This document shows positions 29,488 through 60,549 of a stretch of DNA of 64,000 nucleotides, piece by piece. Origin of the DNA: Macrostomum hystrix (taxonomy: Eukaryota; Animalia; Platyhelminthes); assembly GCA_950097015.1 (NCBI GenBank), contig CATNEN010000032.1, positions 1 to 64,000 of the forward strand, given 5' to 3'. Each line of letters starts with the position of its first letter. The first letter of the stretch is position 1. The position numbers were made by a program, and so were the translations under genes. The notes under the pieces are model-generated. The model was not told where the DNA came from, did no database searches, and saw nothing but the letters and a program-made list of their open reading frames with translations.

Positions 29488-31228
29488 GTTCTCCAAACAG
29501 AAGAGAACCTCCATAATACCAGAATGGAGGCTACTTGCAGGCTACCAAACTCGCAGCAAGAAATTTTTGCCCTTTTTCTTTGACAGGAAACCATTGCCCC
29601 CAAATAGCATAGAAACGATGTGTCCATCGTTTTACTCAGCCCAGAAGGCAACAAATATCTCCTGTTACATCTCCTGTTACATGTGGCACTGTAGATACAT
29701 TTAGAAAACTGTTAAACACATTTAGAAAATCGTTGGACACATTTAGAAAATCGTTGAGCACTTTAGAAAACGGTTTCGATCAGTGTTCGTCGAATAAAGT
29801 TTTATAATTATTATTTTTAAATAAGCTATTTTTTGATCGAATAACGCTTAAAACAATGCTCAAAAAATAGAATAATTTGAAATAATTTACGCTCTTAGCT
29901 GCGCTGAATACTTTTTTCTTGCAGTTCTCAATTGTGATAACGCCTGCAGCTATGCACAAAAATATTTCCGAAGTTTTATTATCGAATAAAACTTGCTGCT
30001 TTACTCGAAAACGAATACTATTTTCTGAAAGCGAGTACAGGAATAATAAAGCTAACAAATATCTGCTTCGACAGTAGCTAACCAAAATCGCTTACTTATA
30101 CTTACTCGTATTTATACTCGAACCCAAAAATGCCCAAAAAATACTAATAAACAGGAGCTTACGTTTTTTACTGCTGATGATTAGAAGATTAGAAGAAAAA
30201 GAAGCAGTAACAAAACCGATGCTGAAATTCTACCTGCATTCTACAAAAGCATTAAAGTACTTTACTTCGGAGCTAGATGATTAAAGTACTTTACTTCGGA
30301 GCTAGATGAAAAGAAAGCGGCACAATGATCGAAGTCGAGACAAGGTTTGACAATAGAAAGGCTGCAGTTTTATGGATAGAAAGGAGGAGGAGAGGTCTCG
30401 CTAGCATTGAGCATCATAAAAGCCCAATCATGAAATCTGCTATGTACGGTTTGCGTATTCAAATCAAATCACTCGATCAGCCAAGAGACAAATTTATAAA
30501 CGTACGTACGGGTCGAAAAGCAGTGACGCAATCCTATTCAATTGAGAGTATCGGGCCCTGTTCAGTGCTATACCAATGCACGCGCGGGCGAGAAAAAGCA
30601 CCGATGCAATCTAATAAAACTTACAGTGCCCGGACCTATTCCAATTTAACCTTGTTTGGCCTCCTATTGAAAGCAATAGGAAAAATCGTTTTTCGAATAT
30701 TTAATATTGTTAGCATTGAAGCAGACTAACGAAATTTTCAAGGTCTCATGCCAGTAAAATTTGGCATGTTTAGCAAAAAACGCGATCAAATTTGGTTGAG
30801 GCATTTAGCCTGTGCATCGAAATTCCACAGACAGACAGACAGACAGACAGACAGACTTTAGAGATTTAGTATAGTTGGATTATTATAAATAGCTCTATTC
30901 AAGCATTGAACGTGTGAGTGATGTCATAAGTTGCCATCATGCAAATTTCAAGCCTAAAAAGGCTGAAACTATGCAGAACCGATTTAGCGCAAATTCACAT
31001 TAAAATAACTTTATTCAATAAACCAGGAGATTGCCCTTAATTTGAATTCCGTGCTGATCCGATTACATAGAACGAGCTCGTAGTGCCAAACAAAAATATG
31101 TTCAATCATGCAATAAAAAATTCTTAAGTTGCAATTCTGTAAGTTCTTTTAAAAAAGGAAATAAAGATTAAAAAAGAGCTGCTCAAACAAGTTCACACTC
31201 GTACGCGGGATTTAAAAAAAATCACACC

Positions 31229-34200
31229 TTACGCATCGCCAGCACTGGTCATGAGACCGATCTGCTGCTTGAGTGCATTGGTCAGTTCAAGGCTCAGTCG
31301 CATCGCACGCCTGCAGTAGCCGCCGAGCTCGCCGAAGCGACCGTCACGAGCCGCAGCCAGCAATGGCTCAGGATTGAAATGCAGCGAAATGTCGCACACG
31401 GGCTGCGGCTCCGTCTGAGTGTCTCCGCCCATGTGCAGCGAGCCGATAGTGACGCAAACCATCGGCCATGCACCTTCGTCTGGCCGGTGGAATCGTCGGA
31501 CAATAGAACGCTCCCGTCTAGCCAAAACAATGACGGACTTTGGCACCCGATCGCTGACAACAACTTTGCCAGTTCCCGGATCCCGAGCCAAATAGGGAAA
31601 CTCCTCACCGTCCGGGAACAATGCTCGGTGCATGTCGGACCCGGCTTGCAATGGCCGGCATGCCGTCAAGCCGATGCGCATGTCCAGCAGTTCCTGATAC
31701 CCAGCCTCTGCAACGAACCGTCCAGCCTCACTGTCATTCTGAACCTCGTCACCAGTTGCGCGCGTGACTTCACTCTCACCAGCAGCAGCTTTCTGTTCCG
31801 TTGTTCGCCCCTCCTTCCTGCGTGCGGATGTGTATTTTTTGTTTCGTTTCTTCTTGCCTTGGCGATTGACTTCGTTTTCAGTAGATTCACTGCGACTCGC
31901 GGTAACCGTATCTTGCTGTATATTCATCACGCCTGTACCTTTGCTGAGTTTCGCGATCTCATTTAGTGAGTCTCTCTCCCCAGGTCTATCCGAGTCAAGA
32001 ATATTGGCGTAGATGCAATTCAGTGGACGCTCATAGACGCGAACGAGACGCAACTCGAGATCATGCTGGAGGTGCACCTCGTATGAAGCGCTGAGTCTGA
32101 CAGACACTTTCCAACCTGTCACAAATTTCTGTTGCACCTCAGTCGTCTCAATGAATTTCAAAGATTTGAGTGCCTTCTCATAAACCTTCACGATGGTGTC
32201 GGTGCGGAGCTTCTTTAGGTCAGCCGCTATTCCCGCCAGAAATCCGACGCCTAGACGATATCGCTTTCGATGGCGTGGCTTTGCAGCCTTTTCTAGTTGA
32301 ATCGGTAACGATGCACCTCGGAGCTTGTCATTTGGGTTTCCTAGACTGACCATTGGCTCATTGCAGGACGAAGCTGCGGCGGCTTCAGGAGCGGCCCGGT
32401 GTATAAACTCGCTTCGCTCACTTCGCTTGCGGAACTTCCGGCCAGCAGCCAAAGCTGCAGAGAGCTCAGAAATGGAAAGGCTTCTCCGACCTTCAGGAAG
32501 GCCGGAAGTTGTGTTTAAAAAGTAAATTCGGCCTGGGCGAACTGAAAACTCTAAGTCGCTTACAAGAGACAATTGAGGCTCAGTTGATTTTGACTGTCGC
32601 AGACGAATGAATTGAGAGCACACGAGATTAAATAGACGACGCGCTGCTTCATCGGCCCAGGTAGCCATGTCGACTCCATCAGTTCCTAACAGCAGAGGAA
32701 CGCAAGTATCATGCAGTCGATGTTCTGCGTTAACTAAATCGAAGTAGTCTCGCAGCTCGACTCTGCAACTGTCCGACAAGCATCGTGTGCCTAAAATTAT
32801 CCCGCCACCCTCCAAGAAGTAGGGATTAGTGTTTCTGTACTTTCTTGTCCAGTTGCCTGACAAGCCAAATCTAGAAGCCAGCTCGCGAAGCTCCGTACGA
32901 AGCCGATCAATAGCTGAGGGGGCTCCGGAAGCTCGCAAGAAAAGACGACGTGAGCCGGTAATCTCTTCGAGGTGCAGAGCATCGCACCCAGTTGTCAAGC
33001 GCAAGCGAATTTCGTGAAACTGTAAAGAACGCATCATTTCGTCGCTAAGAAGTCCAGGTAAACGTTGAGTTAGTCGAACAGCACGACCTGAGCGACCAGA
33101 CATAGCGCGTACTAAGGACAAGAGAGCAGCCGCGTCATGACTGTAAGTGAGACAGCGGATAGCTATATTTGCTAGCTCAGCAGCACCACGAACAACTTCA
33201 GCTGTAATGTGGACCTCAGGAGCCGATTTAACTTTCTTCCACGTGTATCTTACGAAATCATTTAGCTCTGTACACGAGCGAAAGAATTGAAGCATATAGC
33301 TGCCGATTCTTGCAAAGTTTGCCTCGATGTCACAATTCAGTCGATCAACCAGCAGGGCCAAATGCTCTGTCAACGGCAAGTCAATTAGGTCCGGATCATC
33401 TCCATCTGTGTCGCAATCTGGCAGGCAATACAACATCAGTGCATAAAACTCCGCAGTCGGCATCAGAGCCTGAGAGTCATCTGCTGACGGCACAATACCA
33501 GCCGCCCTGGCCCACTGAACCAGCAGCCGGAACAGGGGAAGTCGCCAGGGAGAGCGACTGTACAAGCTCAGCAGATGGCGCGTCTTGCCGAGCCCGATAT
33601 GGTTCATAGTGACATCACACTGTTGACCCTCATCTATGTCTTCGCCTCCATCCAGACACAGGCGACATCGAATCAGAGGAACTTCTCTGTCTAGATGGCG
33701 AGTCTTCTCTAGCACTGAGGCATCCAAAGCAGGCCAAACAAGTGTCTCAAGCCAGTGACGGTGACAATTGACTTCTCCCAATACAGCAACCTCTACAGGC
33801 AGAAATGATTCTGAAGTTGCCTTCGGTTGGGGCAGTACGCACAGATCAATATCGGATACGTTCTCGTCACACAGAAAAATTGATGCTGAGCCATAGACCC
33901 TGCATTTTAGAACTCCGGGACAGTGTAGAGACAGCCGGCCGTCCACCAATGCGGCGGCAGCATCGGCTCGCCCAACGGCATCACGCAAGCCTTGGAGTGA
34001 ATCGCGAAAGTAGGCGAAGACGGAGCGACCGATAGAGGTCTCAATACCTCCTCCTACTTGGCTCCCTTGAAGAGCTGTGTCTGTCAGTGGTGATTGGACA
34101 GTCATCGAGTGTGCACGAATGTCACACAAAACATCGCTTATGACCCATGGGAAGCTGAGACCTCGTGGTTTCATTTTCTGTTTATGCAAATCTTGGTTAC

Positions 34201-37200
34201 GGTATGCAACGGAAAACCATGCTGCTGCCTGCGCCCTCCGCTGATCGTGATTATCGCCAGCGAGTTGATCGAAAATACGTCGATACTTGTTTCCTAGCGC
34301 TTCAAAGGCAAGTCGCATAGCAGTATGAGCCCGACCACGCTCGGCTCGAAGCAGAGGATGCCACTGAAAGCAGCGACCGAGCTCAAATTCTCGTTCATTC
34401 TTGGTACCCCACTGAGCCATCAGTGCACGCAGATCACACCGGTAGAGTTGGTGCAATCGTTGAGCGCTGTTTAAAAAAAATTCATGACCAGGCCACGTAA
34501 CTTCGAACCGTTCGTTGCTACAATTGCTGACATCCAAGATATCCCAGTCGAGGTCGCATGAACAGCATCTTCGATACAGCTGGCCCAACAACTTCTCAGA
34601 GGAGTAAGATACTGAGCGCTCCATAAAATCCGGATAGCCTTTCCCTTGCACTAGTTTTACTGCCCTTTCAGGAACCTCAGGAACGATCCCAGTCTTTGGA
34701 AAGTCAACTGCTATCGACTGCGCACTTGCAACTTTGATTGCAAGCTGGTTGAGGGCTCCACCAGGCAGTTGGTCACAGACGGCCAGATGCAAATTCGCCA
34801 CTCGACCTAGAAAACTGTTGGCAAAGTTTTGGGCACAGAAGGTGGCCAGTCTCTCAGGATCCGTCACATTAGCTCCTTCAGGTAGCAGAGGCTCGCCTGC
34901 TGCCAGGTCGGCATAGTTTAAAGGCTTCTGAATTGCTTCTAGAGGTGGAATGAGTTCCGGATCCCATACAACTCCAAATTGGTCTCCATCGAGGTCCCCG
35001 CCACTACAGTCTGCAGCCAGAGAGCTGCTGCAATCAGACCTCGAGGGGAAAAGCAGCAGATTGATCCACCCTGCCAGTTCTGGACAGGACACTGCTCGCA
35101 CAACGCGGACGTCGCCTGGGTGAAGGCACGGGTTCCGATAAACCAGGACTGGGCCTTCAATCTGCTCGACTTGATCGCTTGGATGCCGCCTGATGCGTAG
35201 AAAGACCTCACCTTCACTCAGAACCTGTAGCGGATCAGGGGCAGCCATCACGCGGCAGCCGAGTTTGCCTACAGGCAGAGCCGCTCGCTTTCGAAGGTCC
35301 AAAAGACGAAAGCGGAACATGCAACGCAGCAGGCCGAGCCAGTGCGGATCAGTCAGCATGTCAAAGTGCTTTGCAACGTTCAGCACTCTAGATTTAGACG
35401 ATGCTGGTTGGTCGATGAAGTTGCAAAGTGCTGCAGCTGCATCAGCGGGATTCGCTAGCGCCTCGGCTGTCCTGCGGAGTTCCGAATCCAGAATGCTTCG
35501 CAGATGTTGCGCTGGATTCCAGTTTGAGCACTGATATGATAGTGCCTCCAACAGAGTTATGATTTCACGATTTAGGAACAGTGGACCACACTGATATGCT
35601 CCCACAATGCACAGTTTGTTATCCGAGCTCTCGAACTTCTCCGTCGATGGTCTCAGAGAGATGCCATGGTTTGAGCCAAGCTCTGGATCATCGTTCAATA
35701 CTGTTGTGAGGACTCCTTTTGCTCCAGCAAAGCGAAACTGATAGGCAGATGGAGTGTATGGCAGCTGAAGTTGAGCCGCGATGGAATCGGCAAGCGCCGT
35801 GCTGATTTTTCCACTACCTGAAATTTAAAAAAGAATTAATTACAACATTAGTACAGTAGCGTAACGTTTAAATGTTAGCGCAATGCAAAAATTCGAACTA
35901 ACCGTCTGTCACAAGATCATTGTTCCTTGCACGTCGGTCGGCGCATCTTGAAACTTGATGGTGCGCGAGTTCAGCCACTGGCGTGTCTGAAGTATGAAAA
36001 AGTCCCAAGCGAGAGAGATACTTGGATACTGAACGAAATTTATCCGGCTTCTCCACCAGTTGGTCTCGCAATCGCTGGACCTCCTCAATGGTTTCAGCGG
36101 CTACAAAGTAGCATCTGCTTGCCCGCAGCTGGCCACTGCTGGCCGAAAAAAATCGATAATGACGACCAGCCAGGAGCAGGCCATCGAGCAAGACGCGACG
36201 AAACCGATCTCCCACCAAAGCAGATGAGGCAACGTTGCCTCCACCCCGCACGGGTCCGCAGGACTCGTCAGTGAAGGCGACCAGGACGAGCCTGTCTGGA
36301 GGTATTCGACGAAGGAGGCGACTTGAAGCGACAGGAATAGCAGGAAACAGAACTACTCTGGTTGGAGTGACCGCCGCTCGCTTTACAAGCACGGAACCAG
36401 CAGGAACAAGAGAATCAGCCACAGCTTTGCCAGCATCATTCGCACCGTTCTCTAAAATGTTCAAGATTGAGCGCAATTTGCGTCCGAATACATCCGTTAG
36501 AAAGGCATTATGACCACTATCAGCTGAGAGCGCTAGAAGCGCATGAGACAGTCGAATAAGATTTTTCTGCCAGCTTTCGCCTGCGCCTGTGGCAGCGTCC
36601 GTGATTCGATTTGAAAGATTATTCGCAGCTTCTTTAGTGATGCAAAATTGACGACTATCGATCAGCGCTTGGGCTAGCCAGCGACACCCGAATTCTGCTT
36701 CAGAAGGTGCAGACAGGAATTCCGGCACGTGCGGGCAATGGAGAATGGGTGGCAATGGATCAGTTAAATGGCTGCCAGTCCCAAGGAGTTCCAGACGAGT
36801 ATCAAGCAGAGGCACTGGAAATGCTGCGCGTAGTCTCATCCAGTCGAGTGGCTCAGCCGACTCAGCAGCTGGCAGGTGCAAGATGAGTACAGGATTACTG
36901 TTGAGATGACGCCGAACTGTTTCATCGAGATCCGACTCTACAGATGCCGGATCAGAAAATATATCATTGAAAGTCCAATCGTTTATTGTTAGATCGTCGT
37001 TTCCTCTAGAAATTTTACTGACCGTGGGTGCAACTCGAATCGGTATGACCAGAAGTCCTTGTGACCAGTCAACGAATGCGAATCCATTGGTTCCAGCAGC
37101 AATTGACAAAGTCAACGAAATTTCACTTGCACCGAGAAAAACGGTTAGAAGACCTCGAGTCGAATCTATCTGAAGACTGACATTTCCTTCTGTGACTCTC

Positions 37201-40050
37201 AGCGATTCAACGAGCTTGATCTCTGTTTGAAACTGTCCCAAAGCGACACCGGTCAAGTTATGATCGCTCTTAATTGTTTCGCTGCTGTTATTATCGCCGG
37301 GAGAAGGTTCAGCTAGTCGGATATCAGGGATAAAAAAAAGAGGTCTACCTGCTATTCTAAAGGACCAGCAGCGTGCGAAAGAGTGATATGCAGACAGAAT
37401 AGGCTCTGCAGAAGCTGAAGTAAAGCACACGACTGCCGTGGTTGTATCAGGTGGGAAGACACCAGATGGCAGACAATTGTTTTCAGCATCATATTGCAGT
37501 AGATCAATACGGTGCACTTTTAAATGGCTTTTGGCTTCAATTTCCTCTTTTAGGTGGTCCTCCATATCTTTCGAGTCGAGTTGCAGCACAGAACTGTACA
37601 CTTGCACCACAAGTTGTCGCCCCATCGACCCGCCTACTTTTAGCAGGGGACGCGCCTCGATAGCTTGCACAGATTGGACAGTAAAATGCCTTACGACTTC
37701 TTTTGTCTTCTCAGAAGGAACGCCACTATTTAATGAATGTTCCTTTACCAATTCATTCAACAGTTTTTCTCTTTCGTGAAGCTCCTTAGCAGCAGCAGCC
37801 TCCTTTTCGTCTACAATTACAATGAAACGACTGTTCTTTTTGCGAGCTCGACCACGACTCTGCAATAGTTGCACAAGAGAATTCGGAGCGTCGAATCGAA
37901 CCACAATGTCGCATGCGCTGACGTCGAGACCCTCTTCAAGGACAGCCGTGCTCACAATTAGACGACTGAAGCCTTCGTTGAATTTACTCACAGCTACTGA
38001 CTGCTCGCCTTCCCAGTCCATGCCATCCGTGCCACCGCGTCCAACGACCAGCTGAGGCTTCAGACTCCGGAAGCGCTCAGACAGACGGGCGTGCACTAGA
38101 CGGGCAGTTCGTCGAGTCCAAGTCAGCACTAGGAGTCGGGACTCCTCATTCACGGACTCCAACGATGCAGCCTCCATCTCTAAAATCTGCATTCGCATAG
38201 ACACATCTTTGGCCCAGGAGGGGTCGGAGCGAAATTTCATTTTGTCGGAAGAAAGACAACGAAGATCTTGCAGAATTGCTTCTGCTTTAGCTACTCCAAC
38301 AACTTCGGACACTTCTATGGCGGCCAGAATGCAGAGGAGGTCGCGCATTTGCTCACGGTTTTGCCGAAACTGTGGTAAATCGCTGTAGATTAGGTTGCGT
38401 AACTGACCAGCTACATTTCGGAGTTGATTTCGCGGCAAAATCCCAGCTTTACCTAACGGTAGGCCAAAATCCAGTGAATTGTTACTTTCCCGAAGAACTT
38501 GCATCGCATCTTCAGAAAATTGAATTTGCAACTCCGTCTGACTGCACACCCGAATTTCAGTCTGAACTTGTTCTGCCGCCTCAGCTGCCTCGGTTGGACG
38601 GAGTGCGACGCAGTTCGATGAGAAGTGAGCCAGAAATGTTTGAAGCTTCTGAGCTCCCTCTTTAAGGCAATCTCCTGGTTCTACTGGGGATGCAGTTAAG
38701 CCAAGCAGGCGCGGTCGTCGACCATCGGGAAGTTTCCGGTGGACCGAAAGAACAGCTTGAAAGTTGTGACAGTAAGAATTAGCATGGTGACATTCGTCAA
38801 TAACTATGCAGGAAAATGCACTCAGGTCCGGTACACGTCGGTTCTTCAAGAGCGAAAGCAGGGCTCCTGCTGTGATCACAACCTGCGAATGTTGAAAGAA
38901 TTTCATTTTAGGTCTTCCTTCGCCATTATATCTTAAACAATATCGTGCAATAATGTAATAATGTACATTAAGTACATTTATCGTACACTACTTCCTTATG
39001 CTTGCATAATTGACCTCTATACGCACTCACAAAGTAGACCCAGCAATCAACATTTAACTGTAAATATTAATCAACCAAATCTAAGCTTGAGGGACAAACT
39101 ACAAACAATAATTTACTCAATTCAGCATGTGATTACGAGTAAGCTTATTAGATCTGAAAGATTCATAAGTAAAAGTCTATATCTGTCTCAAATTATATTC
39201 GCCACAAATTTTCGGATGATAAATCAACAGGCTGGTCATGAATAAGTAAGCTCCATCAACTCACTAGATCATGCGCTCCATCCAGTAGCTCCCGAATCTT
39301 CCAAGTCGTCATGTTCTCGCCACAGAGAGCGGCCACTCGAAGTCCAGTGTCCACCTCCAGCGCCTTCGCCTGCTGGAACACAAGCGGCACCCGCTCCACC
39401 AACAATGCGCCCATTAGGCCAGGGTTGATGGCCCGCATTCGAGCTAGTAGCAGAGCAGCTACCAGCGTCTTTCCTGAACCAGTTGGTAAAACCAGAACTA
39501 GATCTCTCTGCAAAGCTTCGGCAAAAGCTTCTATCTGGTACGGTCGGGGCACTTTTTCAGACGCCAGGAGGTCTGACCACTCAAAGTGCTCTGCAGTGGA
39601 AGCGAATCTAATAACAGCAGTTCGCGCAATTAAACTTGACCATCCGGTAAACTCAGAAACTATTGGTCGGCCATAGAAATTGCTCATATCCACCTGCTCT
39701 ATGACATGTCCAAATCTACGTATTAGTTTCACTGAAATTTTGTCTCTTGGTTCACAGCGGATGCCACCAACAATAACCTTCTTCTTTCCAAACGAGATGA
39801 AGTTAGAACCATGAGGTCCAAATGGAAGTTGAACTCCAACACTAGTCTGACAACTGCTGCAATTCACTACATACTTGGTCCCCTCTTTTTTAATGACCAG
39901 CTTTTTCATTGCTGCTTCAACGAACTGATTTTTTACCGATATGTATACTTCATTTTCAGCCTTCCTGAAGAAGCAAGCAAATTTAGCAGGCAATAAGCGC
40001 CTTCTACACAGGCCACAATCAATGCCAATTTCACTTTGTCGTGATGCCAT
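31229..40050 (-). CDS. Multidomain RNA-silencing protein: Zn module - Dicer/RIG-I-like helicase - cellular RdRP - Cid1/TUTase-like nucleotidyltransferase - KH-like - unknown C-terminus (predicted 2784 aa, 3 exons)
   Basis: Exons 40050-39265, 38882-35903, 35817-31229. Intron 1 (GTGAGT...TTCGCAG, 382 bp, phase 0) joins HDL|VVITAG, helicase motif Ib region. Intron 2 (GTTAGT...TTTCAG, 85 bp, phase 1) joins VTD-G-SGKIS, rebuilding the RdRP TDGxGxIS motif. Total CDS 8355 nt. Confidence 0.9.
33150..33960 (-). other. Pol-beta superfamily nucleotidyltransferase, Cid1/GLD-2/TUTase type
   Basis: VYGSASIFLCDENVSDIDLCV (GS + DxD), VPLIRC, QCDVTMNHIGLGKTRHLLSLY (third Asp), LPLFRLLVQWARAAGI, MPTAEFYALMLYCL, IGSYMLQFFRSC, in the order expected for this family. 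Confidence 0.8.
34110..36390 (-). other. Cellular (QDE-1/RDR/RRF-type) RNA-dependent RNA polymerase domain (spans intron 2)
   Basis: VTPTRV, SSRLLR, YRFFSASSGQLR, KYLSRLGLF, TDGSGKIS, AYQFRFAGAKGVL, RNPCLHPGDVR, SGGDLDGDQF (catalytic, about 34982-34996), AVDFPKTG, YPDFME, LLGQLYR, AAAWFSVAY, LSFPW. Confidence 0.95.
37810..39550 (-). other. SF2 DExD/H helicase domain, Dicer/RIG-I/DRH type (spans intron 1)
   Basis: PRPYQIEAF (Q), LPTGSGKT (I), VIDECHHA (II), GLTASP (III), STAVLEEGLDV (V), QSRGRAR (VI); all intact. Confidence 0.92.
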
Positions 40051-41317
40051 ACATTCTGAAAATTGTATGAAAATGAGGATTAAATTGAGAGCCAATCGTT
40101 GATAGCGATCTTATATGAGATGATATGATGAGTAAATGACTATATGACTAAAAATGTCCAAAAAAGATCATAAAAGTATACCTACTGAAACTATATCTTC
40201 ATTCTTCAATAAAAATATATATGTGGGAAACAAAGCTTCAATTAAATTTTTACTTCAATAATGAGTAGACTAGCACTAAATCATCTAGCGAAATTGCGAT
40301 TTTTGTTTAGAAGTGGGGACTAAGACAAAAATTTAATATAAATAACTTTACTAGAAAAGAGTTAATCATAAAAACTATAGGGTTTCAAAATTTATTTCGA
40401 AACTATTTCACAATTTATTTCGAAACTATTCAAAAATTTGTTTCGAGAAACTATTTCAAAATTTTTTTGAAACTATTTCGAAATCACAAAATAAGCTATA
40501 TCTGACACGCTATTGCATATAGATGCGACAAAATACTGAAATACTGTAGTTTTAGTGAATGCCTCAAAAGAATGCCTTAAATATTTAGTTACATATGCAC
40601 TACGATCATTATAATGTTCGATCCAAAACACAATTTGATTATTTTTGTGATATCTGTACCAGCAAGAAGTTGAAAAAATGTAATAAAATATGTAATGCTA
40701 CGTCTTAATTTATCAACAAAGTACGAATTCCCTCACGAAAACGAAAATTTTCGCTTTTGATATTTAAATTTTACACTAATCAAGTCATTTTGCTTCACTT
40801 AATCAAACTTTTCTGTCATATAAAATTTCAACACAATGGATTAACGTTATTTGTAGAGTGAACTGTTTTTAATATAATAAAAAACATAAATTTAAGCACG
40901 AAAACCCTACTCTACGAGTATAATATTAATTAAATTGAATGTGCAGAATCTGATTCGCGATGGTTGTCGTGCGAGAACATCTATAAACGCAGAATGCATT
41001 TTACTCGTATTTGTTACTAACTCTTACAATTCTGCTAGCCTTTACTAGCCTATATCTTAATGAATTACTAACTTGTTTCAATATAGAAGTCAACTTTTGC
41101 ACATGCTATTTTAGAATGTTTGTATGTTTACAAAAGTCTACTTGACACTGTACATCAACAAAGTAATAACTTGCGTTGCAATTGTACATATTCATTGTAG
41201 TTTTCAGTCCTTAAATTCCGGTCAATGGCGTCATCTTCCTAAAAAACCATATTTAAGTGACTGCTGCTAATTTGGGGTCCCTGACGGTATTACTTTGTCC
41301 GCTACCACTGCAGGCCA

Positions 41318-51760: not shown

Positions 51761-52284
51761 ATCGTAAAAAGCGGAAAATTTTGATTCAGATGGTGGACTT
51801 TCACGAAAATCGGTCTTCGGTTTGGGAGCTGTCGTGAAGTAGGCAGTGGGTATCTACAAGTTAGTAAAATACCCCCGTGCTCTTTCAACGTGGTCTTTCT
51901 ATTTTTAAAGAAACTTTCTTTTATTTATCCACTCGTAATTCCTTTAACAAAGGACAGAATGTCTGTAAACGGTGAAATTATTATTTCATTCTAATCTACT
52001 CTTAATGGATAGAATAGAAATTGGACCTAACCAAGTTGGGACCGGATGTTCAACCAGTGACAGCCGCAGCGGAGGACGCCCTACCAACCCGAAATACTAT
52101 CTTAGCTGGTAGCAAATCTGTAGCACTTAGGGAATTAAGTGTCGAGCTCAAGGACACAAATTGTCTCCATTGGGCTGAGATTCGAACTCCTGATCGAGCA
52201 TGTAGCACTAAAAGCTTTCAGCCAGCGTTTATCTGGTATGGATTCCCATCTCCGACCCTCATTAATCCTGTTTCAGCCGAAACA

Positions 52285-55200
52285 ATGTCCAGCTTTCTTC
52301 GCCTGCCCGTGGACTGTCCCCACAGGCGCTTGGACTCCCTGACCATCGGCACCAGCCGGTTCACAGTCCGCGGCCTAGTCATCGCCAAGGAGGCGCCGCG
52401 CCTCGTCAACACCCGTCAAGGCCGACAGTCCAGCGTCCTGACTCTGACACTGCGGGACGGGCCGGCGGCCTACTGCCAGGTTTCCGTCTGGGGCGAGGAA
52501 GTTTACGTAAGAACGGTGAGCCGCGACTCCGCACAGCTCGGCTCGGTGATTGACGTTGTCAACGCGATTGTGCGTCCCCAGCAGCAGGCCCCCTTTGTTG
52601 TCGGCGGTGGCCTTCCAATTAGCCTCAGCGTAAGCGAAGGTCGCGGAGTTGTCGCCCGCTGTTGCCTGACTGTTCCCAGCGAGGTGGCAATGTTTGATAG
52701 GCTGCGGCGGCAGATGCTTCGCCCGGCTGCTGAGCACGTCACATTGGGTCAGGTGCGTATCGCCTTCGAGATTTCGGTTATTTAATCACTGTAATAGCTT
52801 TCCGTGCCTATAGAAAAGGTAGCCCAGTGGTTAGAGCGTCGGACTCACGACTTGAAGATCGGGGGTTCGATTCTCGACTCCACCTGAAGCAATTTATGTC
52901 CTTTAGCAAGACACTTAACTCTGCATTGCTTCAGTTCACTCAGCTGGGTACCAGTATTAGCTGGGGTAATTGAGGGTGGGTGTGGCGCCCCCCCAGTCCA
53001 TGGACTGAACAGCCGTACGCAGTCTTCAAACGCAGGCTGCACATCTGTCCCATTTGGGGCTGGCGTAATCAGTTATTTATTATTGCGCCTATAGGTTTTC
53101 ATGCCTATTGGTTTCCATGTCTAAAGGTTTCCATACTTAAAGGTATCCGCGCCTTTGTTGTTTCAATGCCTAAATGGTTTCCATTCCTGCGAATTTTCCG
53201 TGCCTGCATGCCTGTCTATGGGTTTCATAGCAATGTGGGTTTTGTATCTGTTTGGGTTCCATATCTGTTTGGGTTCCATATCTGTGTGGGTTCCATATCT
53301 GTGTAGGTTCCATATCTGTTTGGGTTCCATATCTGTGTGGGTTCCATGTCTGTGTGGGTTCCATATCTGTTTGGGTTCCATATCTGTGTGGGTTCCATGT
53401 CTGTGTGGGTTCCATGTCTGTGTGGGTTCCATATCTGTTTGGGTTCCATGTCTGTGTGGATTCCATGTCTGTGTGGGTTCCATATCTGTTTGGCTTTTAT
53501 ATCTATGTGGGTTCCTTGCTTCTGTGGGCTTCGTGCTCCTTTGTTTCCTGCCTCTTGAACCAGAACGCTCGTTATCCTCGATCATCGCCTTGCAGGCTCT
53601 CCGCTGCGCCACAGAGCAGCCGCAGTACGCATGCTTGCTGGCGCTGGTCCGCAGGGTCGATCCGCCGCGTCAGCTGACTACAAAGGAGGGCCGCCTCACC
53701 CACAGAGCCGAGCTGCTGCTTTGCGACGCCACCTGCCGGTCGTTCCCGCTGGCCTTTTGGGGACTCGAGGATTGCGATGCCATCGCCGGAATGCGGCCCG
53801 GTCAAGCTGTCAGCGTTGTCGACTGCCGCATCGCCGCCAGCCGGTTCCGCCGCGGAGCCGGCGAGGCTACGGCCGACCGACGCACCGTGCTGATTGCCGA
53901 CCCGCTCTGCTCCGAGGCCGCCACCCTGCTGGCTCAGGCGGCCGACCTGCTGGCTGGCGACGACAACGATGCCGGCGTTGCTAATGACAACAGTAAGTAC
54001 TCCAGCGGCAACGAGGAAGAGGACTCTGACGATCAAACGGCCGCCGAGCATCAGCAGGCTCCGCAGCAGCAGCGTCCCTGGCAGGCAGCCAATCAGCAGC
54101 AGGCTCCGCCGTTGCACACCATCCATAGCGTCCTGACGGCCTCCCAGCTGACCAACTCTCCACCAGCCGGTGTCGAATTCGCCATTGTGTTCGGCTGCCT
54201 CACTGAGCTGGACATTGTTAGCCGGGTGCCACCTGTCATCCTGCACTGCTCGGTCTGCTCTGGTCACTATAGGTAGCTGCCATGGCTTTACTACCCTTCA
54301 GTTTAAAATCTGGGTGGATATTGTGGGTCCGTCTGTGGGTTTTTTGGCTCGATATGATGATGTTTTGGCATATTGTTATTTAATACGAATGTCTTTGATG
54401 CTACTGTTAGCCGGATCTGTGAATTTGAGGATTTTTCATCAACCTTTGTGGATATTGTCGATCAATCTGAGGATCTATTAGGAAAATCTTTGATCAATTT
54501 GGGATCTGTGGGGACATTGCTGATCAATCTGGGGATCTGTGAAGATATTGTTGATCAGTCTAAGGATCTATGGGGATATTGTTGATCGATGAGGATCTAT
54601 GGGGATATTGTTGATCGATGAGGATCTTTGGGGATATTTTTGATCAGTCTGAGGATCTATGGGTATTTTGTCGATCGATGAGGATCTATGGGGAAATTGT
54701 TTGTTGATCGATGAGGATCTATTGGATATTGTTGATCGATGAGGATCTTTGGGGATATTGTTGATCAATCTGAGGATCTCTGGGGATATTGTTGATTAAT
54801 CTGCGGATCTGTAGGGATATTGTTGATCTAATAAGGGATCTGGGGGGTTTCTTGTCAATCTGGGGACCTATGGGGATAATCTGGGACATCTGGCTCGTTG
54901 TTTCAATCGCTACAGCATATCCCATTGGAATGAAACACATCGTAGGCTGCCTCAAGACGATGCGGAGCCGGCCTTGCTGGGCCACGGAGACGGCTCGCCG
55001 GCGGGCTGTCTGAATGCCGACTGCGCTGGAGCCACGCTGCAGCCAACGGAAGTTCCAAGCGCAGTGCTCGAGGCTGCCGATCACAGCGGCACTGTGAGAA
55101 TGCGGGCTCAGGGCCAGGTAATTGGCGCGCCACCTATTGCTGCTCCATTTGTACTTCTCTAGTATGATACTCGTATGAGTGTAGCCACTAAACTAAACTC

Positions 55201-58560: not shown

Positions 58561-59156
58561 TTAGTGTCCTTGACTCCTTTTGTGATTTCGGTAGGGACTT
58601 TTTTGTGAGCCCCTAAAAGTTCAGTCATTTCGTCGATTTAAACCAGAAGGAGAGCCTAGACGGGTCGGTGAAATTTCGGAACAATATCGCTTCCTGCTCC
58701 CCACCCAATGCGCAAGTTGGTGCAAAATCTGAGACAGACGGATGAAGAACAATTAAACTTTCCTTTCTTCTTTTTTTACACCTTTTAAGCCAGTGACGTC
58801 AACCCCCTATCCCCATTTTGTCTAATCTCCTCCTACCTGGTCGGTAACGTGGCTCTTAATTAGCTATGCAACACTCAAAGTGAGTGCCCACCTGTGAAAC
58901 CAGCACCCACCTGTCACAATTAATCCTTGTTGCGCTATCCCAGATCCTCAGTCCTCCTGACCCGAGGATCCTTCCCGTTTTTTCTCTCCACAATGCAAGA
59001 AAATATAATGGACTTCTTTCGTGGGAAAATGAGTGAAGGTGAGAAAAGTCTTTCTTTATTTCCTTAAAATTTAAGCACCCACAGCTTCTCTGTCCTGAGT
59101 CCCACTTGACGCTTGTGCAGTTTTTCTTTTGTGTACCAGACTCCATATTATAATTC

Positions 59157-60045
59157 TGCCATTCCAGGTTCTAGAACTGCCATTCCAGGTTCTAGATCTG
59201 CCATTCCAGGTTCTAGATCTGCCATTCCAGGTTCTAGATCTGCCATTCCAGGTTCTAGATCTGCCATTCCAGGTTCTAGATCTGTCATTCCAGGTTCTAG
59301 ATCTGCCATTCCAGATTCTAGGTCTGTCATTCCAGGTTCTAGATCTGCCATTCCAGATTCTAGGTTTGTCATTCCAGGTTCTAGGTCTGTCATTCCTGAT
59401 ATTTGTTCTGTCATTCCAGTTTCTAGATCTGCCATTCAAGGTTCTAGATCTGTCATTCAAGGTTCTAGATCTGCCATTCCAGATTCTAGGTCTGTCATTC
59501 CAAATTCTAGATCTGCCTTTCCAGATTCTAGATCTGCCATTCCAGGTTCTAGATCTGCCATTCCAGGTTCTAGATCTGTCATTCCAGGTTCTAGGTCTGC
59601 CATTCCAGATTCTAGGTCTGCCATTCCAGGTTCTAGATCTGTCATTCAAGGTTCTAGGTCTGCCATTCCTGATTCTAGGTCTGTCATTCCTGATTCTAGT
59701 TCTGTCATTCCAGGTTCTAGATCTGCCATTCAAGGTTCTAGATCTGTCATTCAAGGTTCTGGATCTGCCATTCCAGATTCTAGGTCTGCCATTCCAGGTT
59801 CTAGATCTGTCATTCAAGGTTCTAGGTCTGCCATTCCTGATTCTACGTTTGTCATTCCTGGTTCTAGTTCTGTCATTCCAGGTTCTAGATCTGTCATTCA
59901 AGGTTCTGGATCTGTCATTCAAGGTTCTGGATCTGCCATTCCAGATTCTAGGTTTGTCATTCCAGGTTCTAGGTCTGTCATTCCAGGTTCTAGGTCTGTC
60001 ATTCCTGATTCTAGCTCTGTCATTCCATGTTCATCTGTCATGCCT
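59157..60045. repeat. 21-bp minisatellite (CCATTCCAGGTTCTAGATCTG)n
   Basis: Directly visible. Confidence 0.96.
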
Positions 60046-60549
60046 GATGTCTTTCATAAAACGAATTTTTTTAATCAAAGCAAATAAACATAATTAGCTG
60101 CAACACGATCATTAATACTGATGTGTTTGTTGTAGAACAAGCTCGTTGTTTTGTGCAAATAGAGCATCAATGTAGTCCTACTGACTAATTTATCTTAATA
60201 GAAAATGGTAGAAAAAACGCAAGCAGTATATTTTAGCATATAGAGTATTTTTCAAGCACTTTAGCAGGTATCGCTTCCTGAATTGAGTGAAGGGTTTGTA
60301 AATAAGAACAGGTTAGTGAATTTTGTGCAGCTGCTAGTATCTTCGCAAAGTGACAAGGCTAAAGAGTTTGTACTCAAGAAATTCTCACATTGAGTCCTGA
60401 TTACAATAAGCGATTGTTGTTTTGTGAGTTGCTCTCATTGTATGGGGTTCTGTTGAATCTATATGTCTATGGCCTAACCATATGTACTCAATGTTGAGCG
60501 AAATGAATCGGGTAGATGGGAGAATAGGTTGAGTCAGCTCCACCCACTG

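What the first reader, a model, noticed from the sequence alone, without database searches (positions are those of the whole stretch)
31229..40050. One polypeptide fusing a Dicer/RIG-I-type helicase, an RdRP and a TUTase-type nucleotidyltransferase: an RNAi amplification complex in a single gene
Seen: three exons splice in frame into 2784 aa, and each splice rebuilds a conserved motif (helicase HDL|VVITAG; RdRP TD-G-SGKIS). Helicase motifs I-VI, RdRP DLDGD and NTase GS/DxD/D are all intact. RdRP and NTase lie in the same uninterrupted 4.6-kb exon, so that fusion cannot be a gene-model artefact. Established: these activities cooperate as separate subunits in S. pombe RDRC (Rdp1, Hrr1, Cid12; Hrr1 is SF1, not SF2), Tetrahymena RDRC (Rdr1 with Rdn1/Rdn2) and C. 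elegans (RRF-1/EGO-1 with the Dicer-related helicase DRH-3; RDE-3/MUT-2 tails RdRP templates). Helicase-RdRP fusions are known, e.g. Dictyostelium RrpA/B/C. I am not aware of a described helicase-RdRP-NTase triple fusion, but could not search. Inference: a self-contained sense-tail-copy machine for antiviral or transposon silencing in an animal.
Basis: partly seen in the sequence, partly recalled or inferred. Interest (0 to 1): 0.93.

Follow-up and report, generated by a model that had tools for sequence, protein, structure and literature searches.

The report
Single-chain helicase–RdRP–tailing enzyme gene
A flatworm gene really does encode one 2,784-residue protein that joins an RNA-end sensor, a Dicer-type helicase, an RNA-copying polymerase, an RNA-tailing enzyme and a 5'-triphosphate-tunnel domain, and uncharacterised relatives with the same core architecture occur from sponges and Hydra to dinoflagellates.

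Summary
The minus-strand gene 40050..31229 has three exons. RNA-derived contigs from four runs remove both introns at exactly the predicted GT..AG sites. They show no joint inside the 4.6-kb third exon, and they carry the Macrostomum spliced leader 6 nt upstream of the ATG.

Helicase (Dicer/RIG-I type) and RdRP are strong Pfam and PDB matches. The NTase is weak in Pfam on this sequence alone (E 0.016-0.07). It is secured by three results:
- a family profile matches GLD-2, TUT4, Tailor and Cid1 (E down to 5e-9);
- an AlphaFold model matches Cid1, CutA and GLD-2;
- GS, DxD, the third Asp and a Lys are invariant in 30 homologues.

- an N-terminal zinc domain with the fold of RIG-I-like-receptor C-terminal domains;
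- a KH-like unit (inferred only);
- a C-terminal Cet1/RESC1-2-like triphosphate-tunnel domain.

The architecture is not unique to this worm. About 64 cluster representatives share the NTase-region homology. About 25 of them are near full length. Named hosts include Hydra, a jellyfish, a sponge, an acoel, Artemia, dinoflagellates and a diplonemid. All are unnamed or annotated only as RdRP, and I found no paper describing the fusion.

The role as an all-in-one RNAi amplification module is inferred, not shown.

The parts
40056..40057 (-). Spliced-leader trans-splice acceptor (cag|AATGTATGG), 6 nt upstream of the start codon. The mature mRNA therefore carries two upstream ATGs: the SL ATG opens a 41-codon out-of-frame uORF, and a second opens a 7-codon uORF.
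   Evidence: A loose 24-nt end at 40056 in X2, X3 and X4 plus the next G equals the last 25 nt of the M. lignano SL (PMC8629364). Sequence; uORFs.
39265..40050 (-). Exon 1, residues 1-262: start codon, N-terminal zinc domain, first part of helicase domain 1.
39658..40038 (-). N-terminal zinc domain (residues about 5-131, CxxC at 12-15 and 64-67) with the fold of RIG-I-like-receptor C-terminal RNA-end-binding domains.
   Evidence: AF2 model, pLDDT 88. VIA Z: LGP2 CTD 11.3, MDA5 CTD 10.9, RIG-I 10.7, DRH-1 9.9, DRH-3 CTD 9.6. Foldseek top hits are DRH-3, RIG-I and LGP2 CTDs. In the 20-sequence N-terminal alignment, C64 and C67 are invariant and C12 and C15 nearly invariant.
38883..39264 (-). Intron 1 (382 nt, GT..AG).
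   Evidence: Skipped in contigs of X2, X3 and X4. Sequence.
37704..39558 (-). Dicer/RIG-I-type SF2 helicase (residues about 165-655, interrupted by intron 1). Motifs: Q172, GSGKT 191, DECH 291, TAS 325, QSRGRAR 603-609.
   Evidence: Pfam DEAD, ResIII and Helicase_C. Best PDB sequence matches are the ancestral Dicer helicase AncD1D2 (2.6e-24), DCL1, LGP2, MDA5 and RIG-I. Motif conservation.
36372..37697 (-). Linker region between helicase and RdRP core (residues about 658-1099). It possibly holds the RRM and PH-like accessory domains seen at the N-terminus of plant RDR1/2. This is a lead only.
   Evidence: Atlas feature search scored 0.83 to RRM_RdRP1_2 / PH_RDR2 clusters, below the 0.9 reliability line. 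No Pfam hit.
35818..35902 (-). Intron 2 (85 nt, GT..AG, phase 1, splitting the Gly codon of TDGSGKIS).
   Evidence: Skipped in contigs of X2-X5. Sequence.
34091..36371 (-). Eukaryotic cellular RdRP (residues about 1100-1831, interrupted by intron 2). Catalytic DLDGD at residues 1530-1534 (window 34982-34996).
   Evidence: Pfam PF05183, E 2e-20 plus 3e-89. Arabidopsis RDR2 structures 7eu0 and 7roz, E 5e-58. D1530, D1532 and D1534 conserved family-wide.
33089..34051 (-). Cid1/GLD-2-type terminal nucleotidyltransferase, catalytic plus central domain (residues about 1845-2165). Key residues: G1898, S1899, D1911, D1913, D1990, K2000.
   Evidence: Pfam PF22600 is weak on the window alone (E 0.016-0.07) but matches 19 of 21 homologues (best 4e-13). 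Family profile against PDB: GLD-2 4.9e-9, TbTUT4 4e-8, then Tailor, CutA, Cid1. Foldseek CutA and Cid1 E about 5e-8. VIA Z 17-20. Invariant catalytic columns.
32861..33079 (-). Small beta-alpha-alpha-beta-beta-alpha unit (residues about 2169-2241), KH-like with a degenerate GxxG loop. This is inferred.
   Evidence: Secondary structure of the AF2 model. The family consensus '...FH...L...TGA.V.I...L.L.A.G....I..L..E' resembles KH. Not confirmed by a fold search.
31244..32821 (-). C-terminal triphosphate-tunnel (Cet1-like) beta-barrel domain (residues about 2255-2780), with two disordered inserts (about 2398-2440 and 2546-2630; the second is lysine/arginine-rich and lineage-specific).
   Evidence: VIA Z: trypanosome RESC chains 8fn6_1 20.2 (285 residues aligned) and 8fn4_2 19.1, yeast Cet1 16.5, S. 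pombe Pct1 14.7. Conserved across the family. No sequence-level match.
30650..31228 (-). 3' UTR (at least about 530-580 nt).
   Evidence: Contigs X3 rec14 and X5 rec23 extend to 30702 and 30650.

Best explanation
The window holds an expressed, SL-trans-spliced, three-exon gene of a Macrostomum flatworm. It encodes one 2784-aa protein with this module order:
1. RLR-CTD-like zinc domain
2. Dicer/RIG-I-type helicase
3. linker region (possibly RRM/PH)
4. cellular RdRP
5. Cid1/GLD-2-type terminal nucleotidyltransferase
6. KH-like unit
7. Cet1/RESC-like triphosphate tunnel

What is shown: the gene structure, the single ORF, the domain identities, and the conservation of the catalytic residues of helicase, RdRP and NTase across a family that spans animals and protists.

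What is inferred: the protein works as a covalently linked version of the RdRP complexes known from fission yeast (Rdp1-Hrr1-Cid12), Tetrahymena (Rdr1-Rdn1/2) and C. elegans (RRF-1/EGO-1 with DRH-3, RDE-3 and the 5' polyphosphatase PIR-1). In this model:
- the zinc domain and helicase find and hold an RNA end or duplex and translocate on it;
- the RdRP makes the complementary strand, presumably de novo, so with a 5' triphosphate;
- the NTase adds untemplated nucleotides to the 3' end of the template or product, to mark, stabilise or recruit it;
- the C-terminal tunnel grips, or possibly trims, the 5'-triphosphate end.

Because the family does not conserve a Cet1-like ExE pair on the first tunnel strand, binding seems more likely than hydrolysis, as in RESC2.
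For: Gene model and transcript.

Helicase type.

RdRP.

NTase.

RLR-CTD-like fold: with conserved Cys pairs.

Tunnel fold. The literature shows that RESC2 uses this fold to bind a 5'-triphosphate and is catalytically inactive (PMC10201420).

Family-wide conservation: 230 columns are at least 90% conserved in 20 full-length homologues, and the window agrees at 206 of them, including all catalytic motifs.

Same architecture elsewhere: Hydra, Rhopilema, Oopsacas, Convolutriloba, Artemia, Effrenium, Prorocentrum and Sulcionema. Precomputed Pfam for several of them reads DEAD + Helicase_C + RdRP + PF22600.

The recurrent physical association of RdRP, helicase and NTase in S. pombe, Tetrahymena and C. 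elegans is established knowledge, not tested here.
Against: No functional data were examined: no small-RNA libraries, no knock-down, no enzyme assay.

Pfam on the window's own NTase is below threshold (13.6-15.7 bits against a cut-off of 27).

The tunnel domain is recognised only by fold, on a predicted model, and its metal-binding glutamates could not be mapped.

The KH-like and RRM/PH assignments are weak.

Two residues nearly invariant in the zinc domain elsewhere (W105, R120) are replaced in the window (I105, V120) and in the M. lignano orthologue, so end recognition may differ in this lineage.

RNA contigs break inside exon 2, so no single assembled molecule spans the whole 8.9-kb mRNA.

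Animal RdRPs do not always make siRNAs: Pinzon et al. 2019 (PMC6396948) found no RdRP-dependent small RNAs in Branchiostoma.
Confidence: 0.7

Rival explanations
1. Gene-model artefact. Two or three neighbouring genes (helicase; RdRP-NTase) lie in the same orientation and only appear fused because the ORFs happen to be in frame.
For: Contigs of all runs break inside exon 2 at about 37126-37194. M. lignano database models are two separate partial proteins, P0101 and P0001.
Against: Both introns are removed exactly as predicted, and the only 5' end seen is the SL at 40056. Exon 2 is one 993-codon ORF that holds both the helicase C-half and the RdRP N-part. In X2 the two contigs overlap by 25 nt. 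P0101 itself carries DEAD, Helicase_C and RdRP. More than 20 near-full-length homologues, including RefSeq models of Hydra, Rhopilema and Artemia, have the same order.
Confidence: 0.03
2. The fusion is real, but the NTase and/or the tunnel domain are non-catalytic scaffolds (pseudoenzymes). They would position RNA or partner proteins, so the protein is in effect a helicase-RdRP like Dictyostelium RrpA-C with a structural tail.
For: The NTase scores below threshold in Pfam on this sequence. The tunnel lacks a recognisable ExExK motif and resembles the inactive RESC1/2 more than Cet1.
Against: GS, SDxD, the third Asp and a Lys are invariant in 30 sequences with 24% mean column identity, which is hard to explain without catalysis. 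PF22600 is significant in 19 of 21 homologues. For the tunnel this rival is compatible with my preferred reading (binding, not hydrolysis).
Confidence: 0.15
3. The protein is not an RNAi amplifier. It would be an RLR-like innate-immune sensor/effector or an RNA-quality-control enzyme: it detects foreign 5'-ppp or dsRNA and destroys or marks it by copying and tailing, without feeding Argonautes.
For: RLR-CTD-like fold plus RLR/Dicer helicase. A 5'-ppp-binding type tunnel. Animal RdRPs can lack an siRNA output (PMC6396948). Fontenla et al. 2017 found no RDE-3 orthologue but did find RdRPs in M. lignano.
Against: Every characterised eukaryotic RdRP of this Pfam family acts in small-RNA pathways (established knowledge). 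The nearest non-fused relatives are plant RDR6/RDR1. No signalling domain (CARD, death or TIR) was found.
Confidence: 0.12

Closest known systems
S. pombe RDRC (Rdp1 + Hrr1 + Cid12) and Tetrahymena RDRC (Rdr1 + Rdn1/Rdn2)
   Same: The same three activities are combined: RdRP of family PF05183, a helicase, and a Cid1-family non-canonical nucleotidyltransferase.
   Different: Those are separate subunits; here they form one polypeptide. Hrr1 is an SF1 (Upf1/SDE3-like) helicase, whereas this one is an SF2 Dicer/RLR type. Neither complex is known to hold an RLR-CTD-like domain or a triphosphate tunnel.
C. elegans RdRP module (RRF-1/EGO-1, DRH-3, EKL-1) with RDE-3/MUT-2 and PIR-1
   Same: DRH-3 is an RLR-type helicase whose CTD binds 5'-ppp RNA, and its CTD is among the best fold matches of the N-terminal domain. 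RDE-3 is a tailing NTase that recruits the RdRP. PIR-1 handles the 5' triphosphate.
   Different: In the worm all are separate genes. In DRH-3 the CTD is C-terminal to the helicase; here the CTD-like domain is N-terminal. PIR-1 is a cysteine-phosphatase-fold enzyme, not a tunnel fold. No Tudor (EKL-1-like) domain was seen here.
Dictyostelium RrpA/RrpB/DosA helicase-RdRP fusions
   Same: A Dicer-related helicase sits N-terminal to a cellular RdRP in one protein (from my own knowledge; not tested here).
   Different: No NTase or tunnel domain has been described for them. I did not retrieve or compare their sequences.
Trypanosome RESC1-RESC2 (GAP2/GAP1) and Cet1/Pct1 RNA triphosphatases
   Same: The C-terminal domain has the same beta-barrel tunnel fold (Z 20.2, 19.1, 16.5, 14.7). 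RESC2 uses the tunnel to bind the 5'-triphosphate nucleotide of guide RNA (PMC10201420).
   Different: There is no detectable sequence similarity. RESC1/2 are stand-alone mitochondrial proteins said to have no homologues outside kinetoplastids. Cet1's metal-binding ExE motif is not evident in the family alignment.
Plant RDR6/RDR1/RDR2 (alpha-clade RdRPs)
   Same: They are the nearest non-fused RdRPs by sequence (E about 1e-62) and by solved structure (RDR2, E 5e-58).
   Different: Plant RDRs are about 1100-1200 aa, with RRM/PH-like N-termini and no helicase, NTase or tunnel domain. The score falls sharply, from E 1e-71 or better for the fused family to 1e-62.

Membership tests
Eukaryotic cellular RdRP (Pfam PF05183) | Full-length match to the RdRP profile above the gathering score | tested here: met
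   73.5 + 300.7 bits against a cut-off of 23.8. Profile positions 1-157 and 167-581 of 582 lie on either side of intron 2.
Eukaryotic cellular RdRP (Pfam PF05183) | Catalytic DbDGD loop | tested here: met
   DLDGD at residues 1530-1534. D1530, D1532 and D1534 are conserved in all full-length homologues.
Eukaryotic cellular RdRP (Pfam PF05183) | RNA-templated RNA synthesis | not testable with these tools
   Needs an enzyme assay.
Dicer / RIG-I-like (RLR) SF2 helicases | SF2 motifs Q, I, II (DECH), III, VI | tested here: met
   Q172, GSGKT 191, DECH 291, TAS 325, QSRGRAR 603-609. All are conserved in the family.
Dicer / RIG-I-like (RLR) SF2 helicases | Closest relatives are Dicer/RLR helicases rather than DEAD-box or Ski2 helicases | tested here: met
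   The top PDB sequence hits are ancestral Dicer helicase (2.6e-24), DCL1, LGP2, MDA5, RIG-I and Dicer-2. The first non-Dicer/RLR entries are Hef and FANCM at 5e-11 and 2e-10.
Dicer / RIG-I-like (RLR) SF2 helicases | Hel2i insertion domain between Hel1 and Hel2 | tested here: inconclusive
   One continuous phmmer alignment covers exon-2 residues 2-391 against AncD1D2 116-524, which spans the insertion region. The domain was not modelled.
RIG-I-like receptors proper | Zinc-binding C-terminal RNA-end-recognition domain following the helicase and pincer | tested here: not met
   A domain with the CTD fold and two conserved CxxC pairs is present, but it is N-terminal to the helicase. So the protein is not filed as an RLR.
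Cid1/GLD-2-type non-canonical poly(A)/poly(U) polymerases (TENTs) | hG[GS] and [DE]h[DE]h motifs plus a third carboxylate | tested here: met
   G1898, S1899, D1911, D1913 and D1990 are invariant in 30 aligned homologues.
Cid1/GLD-2-type non-canonical poly(A)/poly(U) polymerases (TENTs) | Profile-level sequence similarity to the family | tested here: met
   Window alone: PF22600 E 0.016-0.07, below threshold. Family profile against PDB: GLD-2 4.9e-9, TbTUT4 4.3e-8, Tailor 1.6e-6, CutA, Cid1. PF22600 is significant in 19 of 21 homologues.
Cid1/GLD-2-type non-canonical poly(A)/poly(U) polymerases (TENTs) | Bilobal catalytic + central (PAP-associated) fold | tested here: met
   Foldseek: CutA, Cid1, GLD-2 and TUT7 at E 5e-8 to 1e-6, TM(target) 0.5-0.6. 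VIA Z 17-20 over model residues 30-350. CD-NTases and OAS score lower, at 13-15.
Cid1/GLD-2-type non-canonical poly(A)/poly(U) polymerases (TENTs) | Nucleotide specificity (A, U, or UG as in RDE-3) | not testable with these tools
   Needs a tailing assay or a reliable structure-based mapping of the nucleotide-recognition motif.
Triphosphate tunnel metalloenzymes (Cet1-like RNA triphosphatases) | Antiparallel beta-barrel tunnel fold | tested here: met
   VIA Z 20.2 and 19.1 (RESC chains), 16.5 (Cet1), 14.7 (Pct1), with 220-285 aligned residues. This rests on a predicted model with pLDDT about 85-93 in the strands.
Triphosphate tunnel metalloenzymes (Cet1-like RNA triphosphatases) | Metal-binding glutamates of motifs A and C (Cet1 E305, E307, E496) | tested here: inconclusive
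   The family alignment shows single conserved acidic residues on candidate strands (YFMEG, ERPL, HD.R, FCELSL) but no ExE pair. The window has D where the family has E in the last strand. No residue-level structural superposition was available. For this reason the domain is described as tunnel-fold only, not as a triphosphatase.
Triphosphate tunnel metalloenzymes (Cet1-like RNA triphosphatases) | Basic residues for triphosphate binding | tested here: inconclusive
   Nearly invariant R and K residues lie on predicted strands (RFG, RK at alignment positions 221-222, R472). Their position inside the tunnel was not verified.

The most novel reading that the evidence does not exclude
This is a member of an ancient, pan-eukaryotic, so far undescribed single-chain enzyme. 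It unites RNA-end sensing (RLR-CTD-like domain plus Dicer-type helicase), RNA copying, 3' tailing and 5'-triphosphate capture.

If that is right, three things follow:
- The pairing of an RLR-type CTD with a Dicer-type helicase predates animals, because it is present in dinoflagellate and diplonemid members. RLRs are usually called metazoan-specific.
- The kinetoplastid guide-RNA binders RESC1/2, said to have no homologues outside kinetoplastids, share a fold, and perhaps an origin, with an RNAi-type module that diplonemids still carry.
- The multi-subunit RDRCs of yeast, ciliates and nematodes may be split descendants or analogues of such a fused ancestor.
Probability: 0.3. Interest if true: 0.85.

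Novelty: new variant of a known kind. Interest (0 to 1): 0.74.

Why it matters
RdRP, a helicase and a tailing enzyme have been found together, as separate subunits, in every RdRP complex purified so far. A natural fusion conserved from sponges to dinoflagellates is independent 'Rosetta-stone' evidence that this partnership is ancient and obligatory.

It also supplies a single-gene handle for studying RdRP function in animals. Outside nematodes that function is an open question (Pinzon et al. 2019). Macrostomum is amenable to RNAi knock-down and Hydra is a laboratory model, so the prediction is directly testable.

The two flanking domains point to how such machines might select 5'-triphosphate or duplex ends and hold their own products. 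They also link RLR-type sensing and the trypanosome guide-RNA binder fold to RNAi machinery.

It also explains why Fontenla et al. (2017) found RdRPs but no RDE-3 orthologue in M. lignano: a tailing enzyme is built into the RdRP.

Tried and rejected
- Pfam on the window's NTase alone gave only a sub-threshold PF22600 hit. phmmer of exon 3 against PDB found no NTase. The domain was secured only through homologues, a profile and a fold model.
- A profile of the C-terminal region against PDB sequences found nothing relevant, and the Atlas feature search on it found nothing above 0.61. So the tunnel assignment is fold-only.
- The Atlas search on the helicase-RdRP linker gave RRM_RdRP1_2 / PH_RDR2 at 0.83, kept as a lead only.
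- A quick ML tree of the RdRP core (31 sequences, plant RDR1/6 included) pairs the window with M. lignano but leaves the deep branches open, with several rows of deviant composition. The careful search did not finish. It cannot decide between vertical descent and transfer between animals and protists.
- Run X1 (organism A, share 0.05) laid nothing.
- Literature: five searches found no description of a helicase-RdRP-NTase fusion. The one review most likely to mention it (Burroughs, Ando & Aravind 2014, PMC4066877) and Wasik et al. 2015 (PMC4603488) are not held, so prior mention cannot be excluded.
- A CD-NTase/cGAS-like identity for the NTase was considered and rejected: those folds score Z 13-15 against 17-20 for TENTs, and profile hits are all TENTs.
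- A transposon or viral origin was considered and rejected: spliceosomal introns, SL trans-splicing, cellular-type RdRP, conserved orthologues.
Full report
**1. The observation**

The minus strand between 40050 and 31229 carries three long ORF pieces. Reading the sequence at the proposed junctions gives a canonical GT at 39264-39263 and AG at 38884-38883 for intron 1. Intron 2 has GT at 35902-35901 and AG at 35819-35818.

Joined in a script, the CDS is 8355 nt, or 2784 aa, with one terminal stop. The junctions read HDL|VVITAG and TD-G-SGKIS.

Pfam profile coordinates run on across both junctions: DEAD 1-92 then 98-160, and RdRP 1-157 then 167-581. That is what a correct splice predicts and a chance in-frame join does not.

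**2. Transcript evidence**

Four public runs of one organism hold 95-96% of the sampled words of this stretch. Their contigs are 100% identical to the window and skip exactly the two predicted introns, with CT..AC ends on the + strand. They are therefore cDNA-derived.

No joint lies inside exon 3. Contigs of 6332 nt (X3) and 5468 nt (X5) run from the 3' UTR at about 30650-30702, through the stop and the whole of exon 3, across intron 2 into exon 2.

At the 5' end all contigs stop at 40056 and continue with 24 letters that do not match the genome. Reverse-complemented and joined to the next G, these are the last 25 nt of the published 35-nt Macrostomum lignano spliced leader (PMC8629364). The mRNA is thus SL trans-spliced at cag|AATGTATGG, 6 nt before the ATG.

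The SL's own ATG and a second ATG open short out-of-frame uORFs of 41 and 7 codons.

The one gap is that contigs break inside exon 2 near 37126-37194 in every run. In X2 the pieces overlap by 25 nt. Exon 2 is one 993-codon ORF holding both the helicase C-half and the start of the RdRP, and full-length homologues have the same order. I therefore regard a split as very unlikely, but no single assembled molecule proves continuity.

**3. Organism**

The nearest database proteins are two partial M. lignano models, 54-75% identical to the corresponding parts of the window protein. P0101 covers the N-half and carries DEAD, Helicase_C and RdRP. P0001 covers the C-half and carries RdRP plus the NTase region.

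With the identical SL tail, the window is most likely from another Macrostomum species. Both M. lignano models confirm the two splice junctions at the protein level.

**4. Helicase and RdRP**

Exons 1 and 2 match DEAD/ResIII and Helicase_C. Against PDB sequences the best hits are a reconstructed ancestral Dicer helicase (2.6e-24), Arabidopsis DCL1, LGP2, MDA5, RIG-I and Dicer-2.

Motifs Q, I, II (DECH), III and VI are intact and conserved in the family.

The RdRP matches PF05183 over its whole length and Arabidopsis RDR2 structures at 5e-58. It carries DLDGD at residues 1530-1534.

**5. The nucleotidyltransferase**

On the window alone the only Pfam hit is PF22600 (MTPAP-like central/palm domain), at 13.6-15.7 bits against a threshold of 27. 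phmmer against PDB finds nothing.

An exhaustive HMMER search with residues 1816-2336 found 64 cluster representatives. Many are 2200-2740 aa long with the match at about 1800-2300.

- In 21 long members, PF22600 is significant in 19, with a best E-value of 4e-13.
- A 30-sequence alignment (A2) has GS, SDxD, the third Asp, a Gly and a Lys invariant at 24% mean column identity.
- The A2 profile hits GLD-2 (4.9e-9), T. brucei TUT4 (4.3e-8), Tailor, CutA, Cid1 and MEAT1 in PDB.
- An AlphaFold model built on A2 (mean pLDDT 75, above 90 over most of this domain) matches CutA, Cid1, GLD-2, TUT7 and mtPAP by Foldseek (E 5e-8 to 1e-6).
- VIA-align gives Z 17-20 for the same enzymes. CD-NTases, OAS and cGAS score lower, at 11-15.

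The domain is a Cid1/GLD-2-type terminal nucleotidyltransferase with a complete catalytic set. Its nucleotide preference cannot be read from these data.

**6.

(a) The same model shows that residues about 2255-2780 form a beta-barrel. Its best structural matches in a Foldseek-independent scan of 48,161 chains are the trypanosome RESC chains 8fn6_1 (Z 20.2, 285 residues) and 8fn4_2 (Z 19.1), yeast RNA triphosphatase Cet1 (Z 16.5) and S. pombe Pct1 (Z 14.7).

This is the triphosphate-tunnel fold. Dolce et al. 2023 (PMC10201420) showed that RESC2 uses it to bind the 5'-triphosphate nucleotide of guide RNA. They also showed that RESC1/2 lack two of the three metal-binding glutamates and are inactive.

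In the family alignment (A3) the strands carry conserved basic residues: RFG, an RK pair, and an Arg in HD.R. Acidic residues occur singly (YFMEG, ERPL, FCELSL), with no ExE pair. I therefore favour 5'-ppp binding over hydrolysis, with low certainty.

No sequence method sees this domain.

(b) Between the NTase and the tunnel lies a 70-residue beta-alpha-alpha-beta-beta-alpha unit whose consensus resembles a KH domain with a degenerate GxxG loop. This is inferred only.

(c) A second model of exon 1 (pLDDT 88) shows that residues 5-131 adopt the fold of RLR C-terminal domains. These residues carry two CxxC pairs conserved across the family (C64 and C67 invariant, C12 and C15 nearly so), including the dinoflagellate and diplonemid members. 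VIA gives LGP2 Z 11.3, MDA5 10.9, RIG-I 10.7, DRH-1 9.9 and DRH-3 9.6 as the top seven hits. Foldseek's top hits are the DRH-3, RIG-I and LGP2 CTDs.

The CTD-like domain here precedes the helicase instead of following it. Two positions nearly invariant elsewhere (W105, R120) are Ile and Val in the window and are also replaced in the M. lignano orthologue.

(d) The 440 residues between helicase and RdRP may hold RRM and PH-like domains as in plant RDR1/2. This is an Atlas lead at 0.83 only.

**7. Distribution**

Named members of the family:
- Hydra vulgaris, two loci with several isoforms
- Rhopilema esculentum (jellyfish)
- Oopsacas minuta (sponge)
- Convolutriloba macropyga (acoel)
- Artemia franciscana
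- M. lignano
- the dinoflagellates Effrenium voratum and Prorocentrum cordatum/Polarella
- the diplonemid Sulcionema specki
- a partial Rhodomonas (cryptophyte) protein

All are 'uncharacterized', 'unnamed' or automatically called RdRP.

When searching with the RdRP core alone, the 30 best hits (E below 1e-70) all belong to this group. Scores then drop to plant RDR6/RDR1 at about 1e-62. The fused proteins therefore form a distinct RdRP group nearest the alpha clade.

A quick tree could not resolve its deep branches.

About a third of the members end about 240 residues after the KH-like unit rather than about 500. Hydra has isoforms of both lengths. I did not determine whether this is biology or truncated models.

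**8. Mechanism (inferred)**

The domain set reproduces, in one chain, the parts list of known RdRP machines:
- Rdp1-Hrr1-Cid12 in fission yeast;
- Rdr1-Rdn1/2 in Tetrahymena;
- RRF-1/EGO-1 with the RLR-type helicase DRH-3, the tailing enzyme RDE-3 and the 5' polyphosphatase PIR-1 in C. elegans.

The most economical reading has four steps. The zinc domain and helicase recognise and track an RNA end or duplex. The RdRP copies the template. The NTase tails a 3' end. The tunnel holds the 5'-ppp end of the de novo product or of a triphosphorylated target.

Shown here: the architecture, the expression, and the conservation of catalytic residues. Not shown: any activity, any small-RNA output, or any biological target.

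**9. Novelty**

Fontenla et al. 2017 (PMC5594548) reported four RdRPs and 'no RDE-3 orthologues' in M. lignano, without noting the architecture. Pinzon et al. 2019 (PMC6396948) surveyed animal RdRPs and do not use the words helicase, nucleotidyl or fused.

Five full-text searches found no description of the fusion. The review most likely to mention it could not be read.

I therefore rate it a new variant of a known kind: an RDRC-type system as a single polypeptide with two extra end-handling domains. There is perhaps a one-in-three chance that the three-domain core has been noted in passing somewhere.

Noticed in passing
window 40048-40079 (mRNA 5' end): After SL addition the mRNA has two ATGs upstream of the main start. 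The SL's terminal ATG opens a 41-codon out-of-frame uORF that overlaps the main start. A second ATG opens a 7-codon uORF. The main ORF starts at the third ATG.
   Followed up: partly
window 37126-37194: Logan contigs of all four RNA runs break at the same place inside exon 2 (25-nt overlap in X2, 27-nt hole in X3 and X4), although the sequence there looks unremarkable. It could be a polymorphism bubble.
   Followed up: partly
window 31694-31948 (residues about 2546-2630): A lysine/arginine-rich, disordered insert of about 85 residues lies inside the tunnel domain. It is absent from all aligned homologues. A second disordered insert (residues about 2398-2440) lies at a variable, basic linker that is present in most members.
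   Followed up: partly
window 39691-39738 (residues 105 and 120): Trp and Arg are nearly invariant in the N-terminal zinc domain of the family. They are Ile and Val here and are also replaced in the M. lignano orthologue, which suggests altered RNA-end recognition in Macrostomum.
   Followed up: no
homologues P0003, P0005, P0006, P0022, P0090, P0091, P0065; Hydra isoforms P0067 and P0069: About a third of family members end about 240 residues after the KH-like unit, i.e. partway into the C-terminal region. Hydra has both long and short isoforms. It is unclear whether these are truncated models or real short forms.
   Followed up: no
P0001 and P0101 (M. lignano database proteins): The M. lignano orthologue is present in public databases only as two partial, overlapping models. 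P0101 also appears to skip about 140 residues relative to the window.
   Followed up: partly
window 52021-52782 (+): This ORF has a clear MEIOB N-terminal OB-fold match (PF24903, E 5e-16). It is probably an exon of a meiosis ssDNA-binding gene.
   Followed up: no
window 59071-60097 (both strands): Overlapping ORFs of about 320 aa lie here. One matches the 'grass antifreeze beta roll' repeat profile (PF21300, E 4e-26). This looks like a tandem-repeat-driven hit.
   Followed up: no
window 30200-30620: Separate short RNA contigs with several SNP-like differences between runs lie just beyond the 3' UTR. They may be another transcript or a polymorphic UTR extension. A repeat at 30821-30862 was skipped by the read tool.
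   Followed up: no
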